Shown piece by piece: positions 1 through 44,175 of a DNA stretch of 45,064 bases. This DNA comes from Octopus bimaculoides (taxonomy: Eukaryota). Where the stretch lies: assembly GCF_001194135.2 (NCBI RefSeq), contig NC_068994.1, positions 10,417,167-10,462,230 on the forward strand. The letters run 5' to 3'. A program made the position numbers and the translations under genes. Positions within the stretch are counted from its first letter, which is position 1; the number at the start of each line of letters is the position of its first letter. The notes beneath the pieces are model-generated. The model did no database searches. It was not told where the DNA came from and was given only the letters and a program-made list of their open reading frames with translations.

Positions 1-29
1 GGCAACCCACACACCCAAGTCGTGCCATT

Positions 30-579
30 TCACATTCTGAGTTGAATTCTGAACCGGAGAAGTGCTGGTTGAACTGTGTGTATATCTGGTTTCGGTAGCT
101 GTTGTATTTGTTCAGAGATGTATGTATTTTCTTTGTAATCTTTTATATATTGTTTCCAAATTGTAAGCCACATCAGTGGGTTCAATTCCTTTTGTCCCAG
201 TTGTTTAAGTTCTGGCATTGCTTTTCTTGTGTTGTATAATATCATGCATGCTTTCAAAGCTTTATTCTTCTTGTGGGCATCTATCCCACGGGTTCGTATT
301 TGATGTACTGAGGCATGGTGTACATTTTATGATTCTCTCATTCTGGTGTTTAATGTTAACGTATATGTTTGTTCCTTCTAAGATACATTTTGCCTCTTCC
401 ACGTTAGTGTTTAAGAACCACATTTCGTCGGTAAATATTAATGTCTTGTCGATGCCTGTGCCGAACGTAAAGTTGTCAGATGCCTGACATCTCATGAGTC
501 CGTTTCTTATGGAGCGCAGAATATAGCTTTTGCCGGAGTTTGGGACTCCTGTTATATGAAAGGAATTAATCTTGTGGCA
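30..579 (-). pseudogene. NS1: Endogenous parvoviral element: C-terminal half of a densovirus-like NS1 (SF3 helicase), frameshifted near 262
   Basis: Manual translation gives HKINSFHITGVPNSGKSYIL (Walker A), KTLIFTDE (Walker B), EEAKCILEGTNIYVNIKHQ (motif B') and KCTPCLSTSN (motif C). After a frameshift it continues KALKACMILYNTRKAMPELKQLGQKELNPLMWLTIWKQY. Motif order and spacing match the parvoviral NS1 helicase and its C-terminus. The N-terminal side is cut at the SINE at 581. Confidence 0.9.
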
Positions 580-580
580 T

Positions 581-847
581 GGAGGCGCAATGGCCCAGTG
601 GTTAGGGCAGCAGACTCGCGGTTTTGATTGCCAGACCGGGCGTTGTGAGTGTTTATTGAGCGAAAACACCTAAAAGCTCCACGAGGCTCCGGCAGGGGAT
701 GGTGGCAAACCCTGCTGTACTCTTTCACCACAACTTTCTCTTACTCTTACTTCCTGTTTCTGTTGTACCTGTAATTCAAAGGGTCAGCCTTGTCACACTG
801 TGTCACACTGAATATCCCCGAGAACTACGTTAAGGGTACACGTGTCT
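581..847 (+). mobile_element. tRNA-derived SINE family A, 3'-truncated copy
   Basis: A box TGGCCCAGTGG and a degenerate B box. Colinear with copies at 9663, 39436 and 40748. Has a 14-nt deletion between two CGCGG repeats in the head and stops at ...gggtacacgtgtct. Confidence 0.9.
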
Positions 848-854
848 AATCTTG

Positions 855-1145
855 AATCTTGCCAGTTTGTGTCCTGTTCCTTTCCCGATTTCAAGAGGTA
901 CTACGAGAACGTGAGCCACTCCAAGACTGTGAACGAGAGCGGCAAAGATTGTCCAAGCGATGTGTAAGGCTATTGAGCCTGCCAAGAATGTCGTTATTGG
1001 ACAAAGGAGAGGACTGCTGAGGAACGACTGGAGGGGACTCAGTGCAGTGACAAACAGCACGAGAATGGTTGCCAGAAAATTCTAGAATTTTGTCGGCCAT
1101 TGCAGCGACATTATCCAGTGTTGGACAGGAGCCGCCCGCCAAACT
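855..1145 (-). mobile_element. Gypsy/Ty3 LTR-retrotransposon gag C-terminal fragment
   Basis: LAGGSCPTLDNVAAMADKILEF...DILGRLNSLTHRLDNLCRSRSQSWSGSRSRSTS matches the 'LDKLAxMADKIxE...coiled coil...RSRSRS' pattern of a common invertebrate Gypsy gag. The CWYH knuckle, protease and LTRs are absent. Confidence 0.75.
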
Positions 1146-1149
1146 CTGC

Positions 1150-1660
1150 TTCTCTTAATCATTGTTCTTTTATAAATTTATACATAAATTTAAAATTTGA
1201 AGCTATAAACTTCTTATTTTACAATTTCAATTTATCATATCTTTGTAATGAGTCATTTGCCTCTTACACTTTTCTTTTTATGGGCCACAAGCCCTTTCAA
1301 TATGAGGCACTCGTCCTCATACATTTTACTGCCCGACCAGACTCCATGCTTCACTTAAGCTCCTCGGTGGTTCTTCATCGGGCACCTTCAGTAAAAAGCG
1401 GAATACGTCTTTGGGGAAGGAATTCATCACCCTGCACAAGTCTGTTTCCCACACGACCTCCGCAGTCATCTGGAGGCCAGCTAGGGTCCTTGGTACATGT
1501 GAGGATCCCTCTCGTCTGACCCTTCCTTGCAAACTTTTTAACAAAATTTTCAACAGCCCCTCCCTTGTGGAAGAGGACGACAAATTCCTCATCCTCATAG
1601 GGCGAGGCCTCAGGTTCTACTGTCGGCGGCACAATTCCCACCGACAGGAAATATACAGTT
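1150..1660 (-). pseudogene. Possible degraded N-terminal part of the parvoviral NS cassette (NS1 with an overlapping second frame)
   Basis: Two overlapping same-strand ORFs (1375-1641 and 1326-1598). The first frame continues through several stops to ...SNFKFMYKFIKEQ*LRE at the gag junction. Same strand as, and upstream of, the helicase. No HUH motif is recognisable, so the assignment is weak. Confidence 0.3.
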
Positions 1661-2329
1661 CAACAAACGGTCGACAGTGCCTTTTAAAACTGCAACAATC
1701 CAAAAAAGTGAAATGGAATTTATGACTACACGAGGGAATCGCATCAGAGAACTTATTTGATGTGTTTAAACTATATGTTCTAAGGGTAATGTACAATTCC
1801 CTTATACATGTCGTGCATTTATTTGAAGTAGCACTATAAGCGGGAAGGGGCCTCTGCAGTTATGGCCCAGGATGAAGAATAATCAATGTTGCTATCTCTT
1901 AGAGTTATTGAGTTGACAAGTTAAAATGTTAACAGAAAAATTTAGAAGTATGAATTATACAAACCTGTTGAAAAATTTCGATGGTGACAAGTTTAAATGT
2001 TCATAAGTCAATATTAAAACTGTGCATCGATTTGTTTGAATGTACAAGGCTCATTAGTGTGAGCGACAAGAAATGAATATTATCAAAGTTTGTCATACTG
2101 AGTTAAGACGAAAAAATAAAACAAGGGAGAAATGAAAATAGTAAAAAAGGGGATTTGGTTTACGATTTCTCTGATCCTCTTTCCGCCATGTGTAGAAACT
2201 TTCACTTGTAAGCAGTGTGTTTTGGAATCTGATGTATTTATAATTTTTTCCGCAAACGGTTCTGATTTTTGATTTGTTAAAAGTACTGATGACCTATCTC
2301 TAAGCAATTTCAGAAGGCTTCAGAGTTTA

Positions 2330-2975
2330 GCACTCTTTTATTGCCTTCCAACGATTTCCTTAAATTCGTTCACCTATGCATTGACACAGAAAGAAAGGTG
2401 TATAACCTTTGTATGAAACCAAAATAGCTGACTACTTCAGCACAGCAAGAAGCAACAGCTTGTTGAACAAGATTCAACGAATGAAAACTGCAGCTGGATT
2501 CTTTTCTTTGAGTCTGGTTTGCATTCCTGTATAATGACCAGACATATTACTGGTGTCGTCATAGGATTGTCTCTTGCAGTCTTCAAAATTTATACCCTCT
2601 TTTCATAGATGCAGCCAGTACTGCCGCTTTGTGGAAAGCTTTTATCAGCTTACCAGAAATAACATAACGTGTAATAACTGTTAGCTTGGTCTGGTGTTGA
2701 ATCTACAGAAACAGAGAAATACTTGGCAGTTTTAAGTTCTGCAACAATATAATTCTTTACATATTTTGATATCAATGAAACAATTTCTTCGTAGATGGCA
2801 GGTGACAAGTATGACTGTTTACCACTTCCAGGATTGCCTAATTTTTCCAAATGGTCTTAGAAATGGATCAAATTGTGCTATAAGTTCCATAATTCCCAGA
2901 AATTTCTCATTGTGTTTAGAGCCTATTATTTCTTCACCACCTCTAAATGCCAGGCCTCTCTCAGAAAATGTGGAT
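2330..2975 (-). mobile_element. hAT-superfamily (ZMYM1-like/DUF4371-type) transposase relic
   Basis: SERGLAFRGGEEIIGSKHNEKFLGIMELIAQFDPFL / HLEKLGNPGSGKQSYLSPAIYEEIVSLISKYVKNYIVAELKTAKYFSVSVDSTPD / GINFEDCKRQSYDDTSNMSGHYTGMQTRLKEKNPAAVFI / SLNLV...YFGFIQRLYTFLSVSMHR*. Several frameshifts and deletions. Confidence 0.9.
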
Positions 2976-3190
2976 TTGGTAGACAGAAACTGAAAGAAGC
3001 CTTTTGTGTGTGTCTTGTTTGTTTACATTCCCTTGTTTTGGCAAAGAGAGACCAATAGAATAAGTATCATTCACTAATAATTTAAAATAAAAAAAAAAGA
3101 CCTAGGGTCGATTTGTTCAACTAAACTCTTCAAGGCAGTGTCCTGGCATCACTGCAGTCTAGTGAATGAAACTAATCAGTAAGAGATAAA
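2976..3190 (+). mobile_element. SINE fragments (CORE-type body and tail)
   Basis: ttggtagacagaaactgaaagaagcc and gtcgatttgttcaactaaa...cttcaaggcagtg motifs recur at 23400-23610, 28300-28440, 37016 and 40125. Confidence 0.65.
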
Positions 3191-3261
3191 TAATAGAATT
3201 ATAAGCATTCAAAATTATTATCAGAGAGAGTTTTGAAATCTCAAAAAAGAAAGGCTTTTTT

Positions 3262-3291
3262 TTTTTTTTTTCAATATGGTCACTGCAGTAA

Positions 3292-3324
<33 letters not shown>

Positions 3325-3700
3325 CCTATATGGTTGCTGCAGTAGAATTTTTTTTTCCTATATGGTCACTGCAGTAGAATTTTTTTTTNNNNNNNNNNNN
3401 NNNNNNNNNNNNNTTTTTTTTTTTTTTTTTTTTTTTTTTTTCCTATATGGTTGCTGCAGTAGAATTTTTTTTTCCTATATGGTCACTGCAGTAGAATTTT
3501 TTTTTTTTTTATGGTCACTGCAGTAGAATTTTTTTTTTTTCTTATAGTCACTGCAGTAGAAAATTTTTTTTTCCTATATGGTCGCTGCAGTATTTTTTTC
3601 TTACATGGTCCCTGCAGTAGAATTTTTTTCCTATATGTTCACTGCAGTAGTTTTTTTTTGTTTTTTTTTTTCTCTCATATCGTCACTGCAGTAGAATTTT
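3262..3700. repeat. ~30-35 bp minisatellite, T(n)-CCTATATGGTCACTGCAGTAGAA
   Basis: 11 CTGCAG-containing units are visible, separated by variable T runs, with one N gap inside. Confidence 0.95.
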
Positions 3701-37920: not shown

Positions 37921-39058
37921 NNNNNNNNNNNNNNNNNNNNNNNNNNNNNNNNNNNNNNNNNNNNNNNNNNNNNNNNNNNNNNNNNNNNNNNNNNNNNNNN
38001 NNNNNNNNNNNNNNNNNNNNNNNNNNNNNNNNNNNNNNNNNNNNNNNNNNNNNNNNNNNNNNNNNNNNNNNNNNNNNNNNNNNNNNNNNNNNNNNNNNNN
38101 NNNNNNNNNNNNNNNNNNNNNNNNNNNNNNNNNNNNNNNNNNNNNNNNNNNNNNNNNNNNNNNNNNNNNNNNNNNNNNNNNNNNNNNNNNNNNNNNNNNN
38201 NNNNNNNNNNNNNNNNNNNNNNNNNNNNNNNNNNNNNNNNNNNNNNNNNNNNNNNNNNNNNNNNNNNNNNNNNNNNNNNNNNNNNNNNNNNNNNNNNNNN
38301 NNNNNNNNNNNNNNNNNNNNNNNNNNNNNNNNNNNNNNNNNNNNNNNNNNNNNNNNNNNNNNNNNNNNNNNNNNNNNNNNNNNNNNNNNNNNNNNNNNNN
38401 NNNNNNNNNNNNNNNNNNNNNNNNNNNNNNNNNNNNNNNNNNNNNNNNNNNNNNNNNNNNNNNNNNNNNNNNNNNNNNNNNNNNNNNNNNNNNNNNNNNN
38501 NNNNNNNNNNNNNNNNNNNNNNNNNNNNNNNNNNNNNNNNNNNNNNNNNNNNNNNNNNNNNNNNNNNNNNNNNNNNNNNNNNNNNNNNNNNNNNNNGATG
38601 GCAGAACGTTAGCACGCCGGACGAAATGCTTAGCGGTATTTCGTCTCTGCCGTCACGTTCTGAGTTCAAATTCCGACGAGGTCGACTTTGCCTTTCATTC
38701 TTTCGGGGTCGATAAATTAAGTACCAGTTGCGTACTGGTGTCGATCTAATCGACTGGCCGCCTCTCCAGAAATTTCGGGCCTTGTGCCTAGAGTAGAAAA
38801 GAATCGTTAGCTCGCCGGGCGAAATGCTTGGCAGCATTTCGTCCGCCTTTACGTTCTGAGTTCAAATCCTATCCAAGTCGACTTTGCCTTTCATCCTTTC
38901 GGGGTCGATGAAATAAGAGCTAGTTGAACACTGGGGTCGATGTAATCGATTAAACCCGTTACCCTAAAGTCAAAATTAGAAACCAATATTTTATATATAG
39001 TCATGATAGATTGTTGACCAAACACCATTCAATTTTTTTTAATTTTTTTTCTCCGTAT

Positions 39059-39092: not shown

Positions 39093-39249
39093 CTTTNNNN
39101 NNNNNNNNNNNNNNNNNNNNNNNNNNNNNNNNNNNNNNNNNNNNNNNNNNNNNNNNNNNNNNNNNNNNNNNNNNNNNNNNNNNNNNNNNNNNNNNNAGAC
39201 ACTTCATTTCACGTTGCTCCAGTTCACTCAGTTTGCAAAAATGAGTAGT

Positions 39250-39815
39250 ACCTGTATTTCACAGGACCAGCCTTGTCACACTCTGTGTCACGCCGAATCT
39301 CCCTGAGAACTACGTTAGGGGTACACGTGTCTGTGGAATGCTCAGCCTCTTGCATGTTAATTTCACGAGCAGGCTGTTCTGTTGATCGTATCAGCTGGGA
39401 CCTTCGTCGTCGTAACCGACGGAGTACTGCTTACTGGTGGCGCAATGGTTCAGTGGTTAGGGCAGCGGACTCGCGGCCATAGGTTCGCGGTTTCGATTCC
39501 CAGACCGGGCGTTGTGAGTGTTTATTGAGCGAAAACACATAAAAGCTCCACGAGGCTCCAGCAGGGGATGGTGGCGAACCCTGCTGTACTCTTTCACCAC
39601 AACTTTCTCTCACACTTTTTTCCTGTTTCTGTTGTCCCTGTATTTTAAAGAGCCAGCTTTGTTACCCTTTGTGCCACGCTGAATCTCCCCGAGAATTACG
39701 TTAAGGGTACACGTGTCTGTGGAGTGCTCAGCCACTTGCACGTTAATTTCACTAGTAGGCAGTTCCGTTGATTGGTTCAACTGGAACCCTTGTCGTCGTA
39801 ACCGACGGAGTACAC
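39250..39815 (+). mobile_element. SINE family A: 3' half (39250-39427) followed head-to-tail by a full copy (39436-39815)
   Basis: Colinear with 9663-10041. Confidence 0.9.
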
Positions 39816-40747: not shown

Positions 40748-41123
40748 GTGAAGGCGCAATGGCCCAGTGGTTAGGGCAGCGGTCTCGCGGTCAAAGGATC
40801 GCGGTTTCGATTCCCAAACCGGGCGTTGTGAGTGTTTATTGAGCGAAAACACCTAAAAGCTCCACGAGGCTCCGTCAGGGGATGGTGGCGAACCCTGCTG
40901 TACTCTTTCACCACAACTTTCTCTCACTATTACTTCCTGTTTCTGTTGTGCCTGTAATTCAAAGGGTCAGCCTTGTCACACCGTGTCACGCTGAATATCC
41001 CCGAGAACTACGTTAAGAGTACACGTGTCTGTGGAGTGCTTAGCCATTTGCACGTTAATTTCACGAGCAGGCTGTTCAACTGGAACCCTCGACGTCGTAA
41101 CCGACGGAGTGCCAACAACAACA
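40748..41123 (+). mobile_element. SINE family A, full length, CAA tail followed by (CATA)n
   Basis: Colinear with 9663-10041. Confidence 0.92.
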
Positions 41124-43937: not shown

Positions 43938-44175
43938 AAGGCCAGTTTCCTGGTTTCCATGGCATATGTGTTCCCCCCTAGCTGAACGGGTCGTCAGTTC
44001 ATCGCGGCTTTTTACTCAAGAAACAGGAAGAAAGAGTGAGAGAAAATTGGGGCGAAAGAGTACAACAGGGGTGTTTTCGCTCAATAAACACACACAACGC
44101 CCGATCTGGGAATCGAAACCGCGGTCCTCCGACCGCGAGTCCACTGCCCTAACCACTGGGCCATTGCGCCTCCAC
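43938..44175 (-). mobile_element. SINE family B, internally deleted
   Basis: Reverse strand has the intact family-A head (A and B boxes), a deletion in the body, and a V-like tail as at 29942. Confidence 0.85.

What the first reader, a model, noticed from the sequence alone, without database searches (positions are those of the whole stretch)
30..579. Endogenous densovirus-like NS1 helicase in a cephalopod-type genome
Seen: ordered SF3 motifs (GVPNSGKS, IFTDE, ILEGTNIYVNIKHQ, TPCLSTSN) plus the C-terminal helix, split by one frameshift. Known: this motif layout is that of parvoviral NS1, and parvoviruses leave germline fossils in invertebrates. Inference: this records past infection of the cephalopod germline by an invertebrate parvovirus that may be uncharacterised. 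The EGxxxxVNIKHQ block reminds me of brevidensovirus-type NS1 and the C-terminus of ambisense densoviruses, so placement needs a tree.
Basis: partly seen in the sequence, partly recalled or inferred. Interest (0 to 1): 0.8.

Follow-up and report, generated by a model that had tools for sequence, protein, structure and literature searches.

The report
Broken parvovirus replicase fossil, cephalopod-type genome
Window 30-579 (minus strand) holds the decayed tail end of a parvovirus replication gene (NS1) that became part of the host's DNA. It is one of many such fossils left in cephalopod genomes by an unclassified parvovirus lineage, and is an ordinary kind of finding with one interesting side issue.

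Summary
On the minus strand of 30-579 lie, in order, Walker A, Walker B, B' and motif C of an SF3 helicase, plus the C-terminal helices, read in two frames (one frameshift). The helicase piece alone passes Pfam Parvo_NS1 (E 2e-13, 50 bits against a cut-off of 20). Its only solved relatives are AAV2 Rep40/68 and B19V NS1. It is a fossil. It lacks the whole N-terminal nuclease half, and homology stops exactly at 579, where a host SINE (580-847, six more copies in the window) begins. It belongs to a well-supported family (291/300 bootstraps) of more than 80 mostly broken copies. Two of these lie on megabase scaffolds of the cuttlefish Acanthosepion pharaonis. Copies differ by saturated synonymous but few non-synonymous changes, which points to separate integrations of diverged viruses. 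The "densovirus/brevidensovirus-like" label is not supported. The nearest named relatives are unclassified "Parvoviridae sp." from bird cloacal viromes (20-22% identity). A parvovirus-related sequence in Octopus bimaculoides was already published in 2016, so this is a new member of a known kind. In passing: relatives carry the capsid gene (with PLA2) upstream of NS1 on the same strand, which is the reverse of the canonical parvovirus layout.

The parts
30..579 (-). Endogenous parvoviral element. It is the 3' part of an NS1/Rep gene, running from just upstream of Walker A through motif C and the C-terminal helices to the stop codon. It is broken: 5'-truncated (the whole nuclease/oligomerisation half is missing), with 1 frameshift, 2 short in-frame deletions and no internal stops within either piece.
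580..847 (+). Host SINE-type interspersed repeat that abuts the truncated 5' end of the NS1 fragment. Its 5' end is intact and its 3' end is cut short relative to other copies, so the 847/848 junction is a secondary break.
   Evidence: Six further copies in the window at 81-90% identity, three of them full-length. Alignment with three full copies shows the 3' truncation and no target-site duplication. ARAGORN and Rfam find no tRNA there.
848..3388 (.). Gap-free flank with no detectable NS1 N-terminus, capsid gene or any Pfam domain. It shows that the rest of the viral gene is absent and that the fossil is contiguous with ordinary host-type sequence up to the first assembly gap.
   Evidence: no family match outside 42-597; first N run at 3389; no Pfam hits

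Best explanation
Window 30-579 (minus strand) is a dead endogenous parvoviral element. It derives from DNA of a parvovirus that was joined into the germline genome of the host, most likely a cephalopod. The surviving piece encodes the C-terminal roughly 180 codons of NS1/Rep, the replication initiator. In the virus, the SF3 helicase domain of NS1 forms a ring ATPase that unwinds the viral origin after the N-terminal HUH nuclease nicks it.

Here the protein cannot work. The nuclease and oligomerisation half is missing, the frame is broken once, and two short in-frame deletions lie in the helicase core. Shown: identity as parvoviral NS1, breakage, truncation exactly at a host SINE, membership of a cephalopod-associated multi-copy family, and divergence between copies under purifying selection.

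Inferred: a SINE inserted into the element, and a later deletion removed the SINE's 3' end together with the upstream viral sequence. Also inferred: the copy arose from its own integration event rather than by duplication of another genomic copy. Any present role, such as a template for small RNAs, is untested.
For: (1) Pfam Parvo_NS1 E 2e-13, 50.4 bits against a cut-off of 20; papillomavirus E1 helicase only 21.9 bits, below its cut-off.
(2) PDB: AAV2 Rep40/68 E 1e-5 with the single piece and 3e-12 with the family profile, then B19V NS1. No E1, large T or D5 at E<=0.01. The residue alignment puts the window's Walker A, B, B' and C under those of Rep40.
(3) Family: more than 80 protein clusters at 54-76% identity. 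Two lie on 0.85 and 1.5 Mb scaffolds of Acanthosepion pharaonis, which UniRef names 'Parvovirus non-structural protein 1 helicase domain-containing protein'.
(4) Full-length relatives have the HUH pair (22/22 sequences) and a conserved Tyr (24/26). An AlphaFold model of P0206 (pLDDT 78, above 90 in the helicase) aligns over about 510 columns with AAV2 Rep68. All of the top 50 BFVD hits are Parvoviridae NS1.
(5) Relatives carry a PLA2-bearing capsid gene next to NS1, and its profile hits solved parvoviral capsids.
(6) Endogenous state: family homology ends at 579 exactly where a SINE with six more copies in the window starts, and there is no assembly gap until 3389.
(7) Between copies pS is 0.79-1.0 and pN 0.06-0.19, including two copies in one genome.
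(8) NJ tree: family clade 291/300 bootstraps, with the window on a deep branch inside it.
Against: The species of the window was not identified. 'Cephalopod' rests on the hosts of the relatives and on repeat content that I recognise only from memory. No read-level or second-assembly evidence was available for the 579/580 junction. No target-site duplication flanks the SINE, so the insertion-then-deletion history is an inference. An element already truncated at integration, next to a pre-existing SINE, fits equally well. The tree has 103 columns, uses NJ only, and contains no sequences of classified genera, because none could be fetched as sequences. Subfamily placement therefore rests on search ranks. 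The direct model of the 105-residue window piece was poor (pLDDT 58) and was not used.
Confidence: 0.88

Rival explanations
1. The fragment comes from a non-parvoviral SF3 ATPase, such as one from a Polinton/Maverick-type element, a D5-like primase-helicase, or a papilloma/polyoma-type helicase.
For: PPV_E1_C gives a weak hit (E 1e-4, 21.9 bits). SV40 large T and papillomavirus E1 appear further down the PDB fold search (ranks 18 and 37 onward), as expected for any SF3 fold.
Against: Parvo_NS1 scores 50 bits against a cut-off of 20, while E1 stays below its own cut-off. The PDB sequence-profile search returns only AAV Rep and B19V NS1. The top 50 BFVD hits are all Parvoviridae NS1. Relatives have an HUH nuclease N-terminus and a parvoviral PLA2 capsid gene alongside.
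Confidence: 0.02
2. The segment is exogenous virus DNA (contamination) or a misassembly, not part of the host genome.
For: The window is a draft assembly with 19 N runs. The viral piece lies at the very edge of the window, so its left flank is unseen.
Against: The gene is truncated, frameshifted and carries in-frame deletions. It abuts a host SINE that has six more copies in the same window, with no gap until 3389. Sister copies lie inside 0.85-1.5 Mb scaffolds of another species.
Confidence: 0.03
3. The family is not a set of viral fossils but a parvovirus-derived mobile element that multiplies inside cephalopod genomes, and the window holds one dead copy.
For: There are many copies (more than 80 clusters). 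One compact architecture of about 3.5 kb recurs in six loci. A strong hairpin lies at one end of one copy. Some contigs carry intact NS1 ORFs of 514-568 aa.
Against: A capsid gene with PLA2 is retained next to NS1, which intragenomic spread would not need. Copies within one genome differ by saturated synonymous change, unlike a recent burst. Most copies are broken. Related ~4 kb contigs of the same layout occur in environmental and gut metagenomes.
Confidence: 0.06
4. The fragment has been kept because it now serves the host, for example as a source of antiviral small RNAs or as part of a host transcript.
For: EVE-derived small RNAs and reuse of parvoviral fragments are described in arthropods (PMC12297876; PMC11357303 on shrimp EVEs). 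The fragment lies in a repeat-rich region.
Against: No protein function is possible in its present state. No expression or small-RNA data could be examined. Its pN against relatives is no lower than that between other copies.
Confidence: 0.08

Closest known systems
Endogenous parvoviral elements of invertebrates, including the Octopus bimaculoides parvovirus-related sequence (protein KOF81493) listed by Francois et al. 2016 (PMC5013282)
   Same: A germline-integrated, fragmentary NS1 helicase sequence in a cephalopod-type genome. The phenomenon and the host class are the same.
   Different: The published octopus sequence belongs to the Lamellibrachia-like NS1 group. Members of that group (P0062, P0065) share only about 30% identity with the window piece. 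The present family is a separate clade (291/300 bootstraps).
AAV2 Rep40/Rep68 and B19V NS1 (solved structures 1s9h, 1u0j, 9bc5, 9kbj)
   Same: SF3 helicase with Walker A, B, B' and C in the same order and spacing. Full-length relatives also align over the HUH origin-binding domain.
   Different: Only 14-20% identity in the fold-search alignment of relative P0206. The window copy lacks the nuclease half and is broken. Relatives place the capsid gene upstream of NS1.
Unclassified 'Parvoviridae sp.' from bird cloacal viromes, the 'parvovirus dark matter' lineage of Dai et al. 2023 (PMC9896142)
   Same: These are the best named matches by HMMER profile (QTE03882, QTE03754) and by structure (Motacilla, Turdus and Emberiza 'parvoviridae sp.'). 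They are small genomes of about 4 kb that lie outside the classified subfamilies.
   Different: Only 20-22% identity over NS1 in the fold-search alignment. They are exogenous or dietary sequences from birds, not host-integrated. The NJ tree does not resolve which metagenomic group is sister to the family (105/300 bootstraps).
Acanthosepion (Sepia) pharaonis genome proteins auto-named 'Parvovirus non-structural protein 1 helicase domain-containing protein' (P0031, P0038; assembly GCA_903632075.3)
   Same: Same NS1 family (about 75% identity in the helicase core), likewise embedded in host scaffolds and broken.
   Different: The species is different. Those loci keep the capsid gene and the NS1 N-terminus, which the window copy has lost.
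   Same: Parvoviral fragments in the genome of an aquatic invertebrate. The capsid of some relatives gives a weak IHHNV_capsid Pfam hit.
   Different: IHHNV NS1 is only rank 17 at 12% identity, and no brevidensovirus is in the top 50. Relatives carry a PLA2 domain, which penstyl-, hepan- and metallo-type viruses lack (PMC11357303).

Membership tests
Parvoviridae NS1/Rep (Pfam PF01057) | SF3 helicase with Walker A, B, B' and C in order, scoring above the curated family threshold | tested here: met
   50.4 bits against a cut-off of 20, E 2e-13, for the window's helicase piece alone.
Parvoviridae NS1/Rep (Pfam PF01057) | N-terminal HUH (rolling-circle) endonuclease domain in the same protein | tested here: not met
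   It is absent from the window: homology stops at 579 and nothing upstream matches. It is present in full-length relatives, with the HxH pair in 22/22 sequences, a conserved Tyr in 24/26, and a fold that aligns with Rep68 over about 510 columns. The window therefore holds a truncated member.
Parvoviridae (virus family) | Jelly-roll capsid (VP) gene in the same small genome | tested here: not met
   There is no VP homology anywhere in the window. Six related loci have a capsid gene with a PLA2 N-terminus. The profile built mainly from the capsid ORFs of the ~4 kb metagenome contigs, with three cephalopod-locus ORFs, hits solved parvoviral capsids 9nek (2e-9), 3n7x and 6wh3.
Parvoviridae (virus family) | Linear ssDNA genome of 4-6 kb with terminal hairpins | tested here: inconclusive
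   The window cannot show this, because the element is truncated on one side and runs to the window edge on the other. One relative (L005) has a hairpin with 42-nt arms, dG -35 kcal/mol and z -9.8, lying 7 nt outside the element's homology. It was not seen in other loci.
Endogenous viral element | Viral sequence physically continuous with host sequence and no longer a working gene | tested here: met
   It abuts a SINE that has six more copies in the window, with no N run until 3389. It has 1 frameshift, a 5' truncation and 2 in-frame deletions.
Endogenous viral element | Vertical inheritance: the same insertion at the orthologous site in related individuals or species | not testable with these tools
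   No searchable cephalopod genome collection was available, and the window's own ORFs are not in the protein collection.
Densovirinae / Penbrevirinae ('densovirus-like', 'brevidensovirus-type') | NS1 groups with classified members of the subfamily | tested here: not met
   The best named hits are unclassified 'Parvoviridae sp.'. After them, ichthama-, chaphama-, ambidenso-, copi- and erythroparvoviruses are interleaved at 12-17% identity, and no brevidensovirus is in the top 50. This is a rank-based test only, because no reference sequences were available for a tree.
Non-parvoviral SF3 helicases (papillomavirus E1, polyomavirus large T, D5, Polinton ATPase) | Best family or structure match to one of these | tested here: not met
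   PPV_E1_C scores 21.9 bits, below its 26.5 cut-off. None appears in the PDB profile search at E<=0.01. Large T and E1 appear only below Rep and NS1 in the fold search.

The most novel reading that the evidence does not exclude
The window's fragment may be one fossil of a cephalopod-associated parvovirus clade that lies outside the six recognised subfamilies. In this clade the genome would be laid out in reverse of the canonical order, with a PLA2-bearing capsid gene first and NS1 second on the same strand. The clade would have entered cephalopod germlines many separate times and may still circulate, since intact NS1 ORFs of 514-568 aa occur in sequencing runs.
Probability: 0.35. Interest if true: 0.6.

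Novelty: new member of a known kind. Interest (0 to 1): 0.4.

Why it matters
On its own the fragment is one more parvoviral fossil in an invertebrate genome, and adds little. Its value is as a pointer. It belongs to a large, barely described family of parvovirus insertions in cephalopods, a class for which I found no characterised parvovirus in the held literature. That family links to the unclassified 'dark matter' branch of Parvoviridae. If the capsid-first gene order and the repeated independent integrations hold up, the family would offer dated host-linked calibration points and a likely host assignment for part of that branch.

Tried and rejected
- A structure prediction of the 105-residue window piece with the shallow family alignment gave pLDDT 58 and an implausible all-beta model. 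I discarded it and modelled a full-length relative instead.
- An Rfam scan of 1-3000 and a tRNA scan of 500-1000 found nothing relevant.
- Pfam scans of the ORFs flanking the fragment, and of other long ORFs in the window, found nothing, so no host gene was available to identify the species.
- Run and assembly accessions of the related contigs were not informative in the paper library, apart from confirming that GCA_903632075 is cited in papers on cephalopod genomes.
- Names for the nearest metagenomic relatives were mostly absent: 3 of 20 looked up carried a name. No sequences of classified genera could be fetched, so I made no subfamily-level tree.
- A third protein search with a broadened alignment returned more family members and annelid or bivalve genome copies but no classified virus.
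- I looked for a target-site duplication around the SINE and found none.
- I looked for terminal inverted repeats in the ~4 kb metagenome contigs and found none.
- Literature searches for cephalopod parvoviral EVEs and for a capsid-first parvovirus layout found no direct description.

Full report
**What is there.** The feature lies on the minus strand. Three-frame translation of 1-1200 shows one frame that reads, in order, GVPNSGKS (Walker A), IFTDE (Walker B), ILEGTNIYVNIKHQ (B') and TPCLSTSN (motif C). A second frame continues with a C-terminal stretch and ends at a stop codon at 30-32. I searched the two pieces separately and did not join them. The helicase piece (105 residues) scores 50.4 bits, E 2e-13, against Pfam Parvo_NS1 (cut-off 20). 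The papillomavirus E1 helicase model reaches only 21.9 bits, below its cut-off. Against all PDB chains the only real matches are AAV2 Rep40/Rep68 (E 1e-5) and an NS1 later identified as B19V, and the alignment puts each window motif under the matching Rep40 motif. The C-terminal piece has no Pfam hit of its own. It does match residues 168-230 of a family protein at 49% identity, E 5e-20. Relatives that read through in one frame match both pieces, so the count is one frameshift. Against the family alignment the window copy also has two short in-frame deletions.

**Bounds and neighbours.** About 30 family proteins stop matching the window at exactly 579, although they extend 35-218 residues further towards the N-terminus. 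No other part of the 45 kb matches NS1 or the capsid gene of the relatives. Positions 580-847 are an interspersed repeat with six further copies in the window (81-90% identity), a SINE-type element by size and copy number. ARAGORN and Rfam do not call a tRNA in it. Alignment with three full copies shows that its 5' end is complete at about 580, but that it is cut short at 847, where the other copies continue. No target-site duplication is present. The simplest history is a SINE insertion into the viral gene followed by a deletion that removed the SINE's tail and the upstream viral sequence. An element already truncated at integration cannot be excluded. The first N run is at 3389, so the fossil, the SINE and 2.5 kb of flank form one gap-free stretch.

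**The family.** A search of 5.8 billion proteins found 13 relatives, and 65 when the family profile was used. They are short, 54-76% identical, and nearly all come from Logan assemblies of sequencing runs. Two are annotated proteins of Acanthosepion (Sepia) pharaonis on 0.85 and 1.5 Mb scaffolds, which UniRef names as parvovirus NS1 helicase domain proteins. A further search added longer members, including NS1 ORFs of 514 and 568 residues. An exhaustive HMMER profile search of 1.84 billion representatives gave 1032 hits. The 15 strongest are this family. Below them come full-length NS1-like proteins of 500-700 residues, at 31-38% identity, from contigs of 3-4.4 kb. The few that carry names are 'Turdus ... 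parvoviridae sp.' from bird cloacal viromes and genome-encoded proteins of the tubeworm Lamellibrachia satsuma and the clam Mactra antiquata.

**Is the family truly parvoviral?** Full-length members and their nearest relatives carry an invariant HxH pair (22/22 sequences) and a conserved tyrosine (24/26) in the N-terminal domain. An AlphaFold model of the 568-residue member P0206 has mean pLDDT 78, and above 90 in the helicase. It aligns over about 510 columns with AAV2 Rep68 and with TM 0.70-0.75 to Rep40; SV40 large T and papillomavirus E1 rank lower. In BFVD all of the top 50 hits are Parvoviridae NS1. The family-profile search of PDB sequences returns only AAV Rep (3e-12) and B19V NS1.

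**Placement.** The best named matches are unclassified 'Parvoviridae sp.' from Motacilla, Turdus and Emberiza cloacal swabs (20-22% identity). These belong to the branch that Dai et al. describe as separate from Parvovirinae, Densovirinae and Hamaparvovirinae (PMC9896142). Below them, ichthama-, chaphama-, ambidenso-, copi- and erythroparvoviruses are interleaved at 12-17% identity. IHHNV is rank 17, and no brevidensovirus is in the top 50. I could not fetch sequences of classified genera, so this is a test by rank and not by tree. An NJ tree of 103 helicase columns and 58 taxa supports the cephalopod-associated family as a clade (291/300 bootstraps). The window copy sits on a deep branch inside it, and the sister group is unresolved. 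The current taxonomy has six subfamilies (PMC13426907). Nothing here assigns the family to any of them, and the 'densovirus/brevidensovirus-like' label is unsupported.

**How the copies arose.** Between helicase codons of the window and four related loci, and among those loci, synonymous differences are saturated (pS 0.79-1.0) while non-synonymous differences are low (pN 0.06-0.19). This holds even for the two copies in the one A. pharaonis genome. The copies therefore diverged while the protein was under selection, that is as replicating viruses, and then entered genomes separately. They are not pseudogene duplicates. Most are now broken. In the loci I examined, NS1 is spread over three reading frames in L001 and changes frame at least three times in L005, and in L005 the capsid region is also split by frameshifts.

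**Noticed in the relatives.** In six independent loci of the family, a gene with an N-terminal phospholipase A2 domain (PF08398) lies upstream of NS1 on the same strand, ending 75-190 nt before it. In L001 and L006 this gene is read as two ORFs. It is collinear with a single 594-residue PLA2-plus-capsid ORF in the nearest metagenome contig. A profile built mainly from the capsid ORFs of the ~4 kb metagenome contigs, with three cephalopod-locus ORFs, hits solved parvoviral capsids: 9nek at 2e-9, 3n7x, 9n5l and 6wh3. Four of the five nearest ~4 kb contigs show the same capsid-then-NS1 order, and one is ambisense. The gap between the genes is too short to hold two genome ends, so the order is not a concatemer artefact. 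Canonical parvoviruses have NS on the left and VP on the right (PMC12297876). I found no description of the reverse order in the held papers, but that search is not exhaustive. One A. pharaonis locus has a strong hairpin (dG -35 kcal/mol, z -9.8) 7 nt outside the capsid-side end of the element. It is a candidate telomere seen only once.

**What is already known.** Endogenous parvoviral elements are well documented in invertebrates. The supplement of Francois et al. 2016 already lists a parvovirus-related sequence in the Octopus bimaculoides genome (KOF81493), aligned there next to Lamellibrachia sequences. That sequence belongs to a different NS1 group from the present family, whose identity to the Lamellibrachia-type proteins is about 30%. 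The A. pharaonis copies already carry an automatic NS1 name in UniRef. The finding is thus a new member of a known kind.

**Limits.** I could not identify the window's species. The cephalopod assignment rests on the hosts of the relatives, and the window's SINE was absent from all fetched loci. No read data, orthologous loci or expression data were available.

**Verdict.** This is a genuine but ordinary parvoviral NS1 fossil. It is correctly spotted and partly mislabelled, and it leads to a possibly unusual virus lineage that is worth a descriptive follow-up.

Noticed in passing
Loci L001/L002, L003/L004, L005, L006, L014, L015; metagenome contigs L007, L009, L010, L013 (L012 differs): Relatives of the window's NS1 keep the capsid gene (PLA2 N-terminus) upstream of NS1 on the same strand, 75-190 nt apart. 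This is the reverse of the canonical NS-then-VP parvovirus layout. L012 is ambisense. I found no description in the held literature.
   Followed up: partly
L005:6804-6907: A hairpin with 42-nt arms (dG -35.3 kcal/mol, z -9.75) lies 7 nt outside the capsid-side end of the Acanthosepion pharaonis element. It is a candidate terminal hairpin and was not found in the other loci.
   Followed up: partly
Helicase codons of window 30-579 and of L001, L003, L005, L006: Synonymous differences are saturated (pS 0.79-1.0) while non-synonymous ones are low (pN 0.06-0.19), even between two copies in one genome. The copies diverged as functional genes before integration.
   Followed up: yes
window 580-847, 9664-9944, 29944-30084, 39245-39332, 39435-39718, 40749-41030, 44019-44174: These are seven copies or fragments of one SINE-type repeat of about 280+ bp (81-90% identical). 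The copy next to the NS1 fragment is 3'-truncated and has an internal 14-nt deletion.
   Followed up: yes
window 22936-23409, 30661-30800, 38600-38837 and others: A second abundant short repeat is recognisable by a recurring translated motif (…NWYLIYRPRK…RQSRP…NLNSE…) in several ORFs on both strands. From memory it resembles a common octopus SINE, but I did not verify this.
   Followed up: no
window 3256-3659 and 11638-12325: There is a T-rich 32-nt minisatellite (about 7 copies, embedded in poly-T) and a C/A-rich 17/49-nt minisatellite with strong negative GC skew. There are also many microsatellites and 19 N runs, as expected for draft-quality, repeat-rich sequence.
   Followed up: no
L005:18112-20799 and L006:17565-18518: Both A. 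pharaonis loci carry a related repeat of about 1 kb (71-90% nt identity) 7.2-7.7 kb downstream of NS1 in the same orientation. It is probably an unrelated common transposon, but the similar spacing is unexplained.
   Followed up: no
P0062, P0225, P0235, P0237 (Lamellibrachia satsuma); P0113 (Mactra antiquata); ENA scaffolds of 50-970 kb (P0210-P0240): More distant NS1 relatives (28-36% identity) are encoded many times on large scaffolds of a tubeworm, a clam and unnamed ENA assemblies. This suggests widespread endogenisation of this broader parvovirus branch in lophotrochozoans.
   Followed up: no
L014 (SRR8281675) and L015 (SRR11869386): These contigs carry uninterrupted NS1 ORFs of 568 and 514 residues from the same family, each preceded by the end of the capsid ORF. 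Whether they are young insertions or exogenous virus could not be told from contigs of 2.4-2.5 kb.
   Followed up: partly
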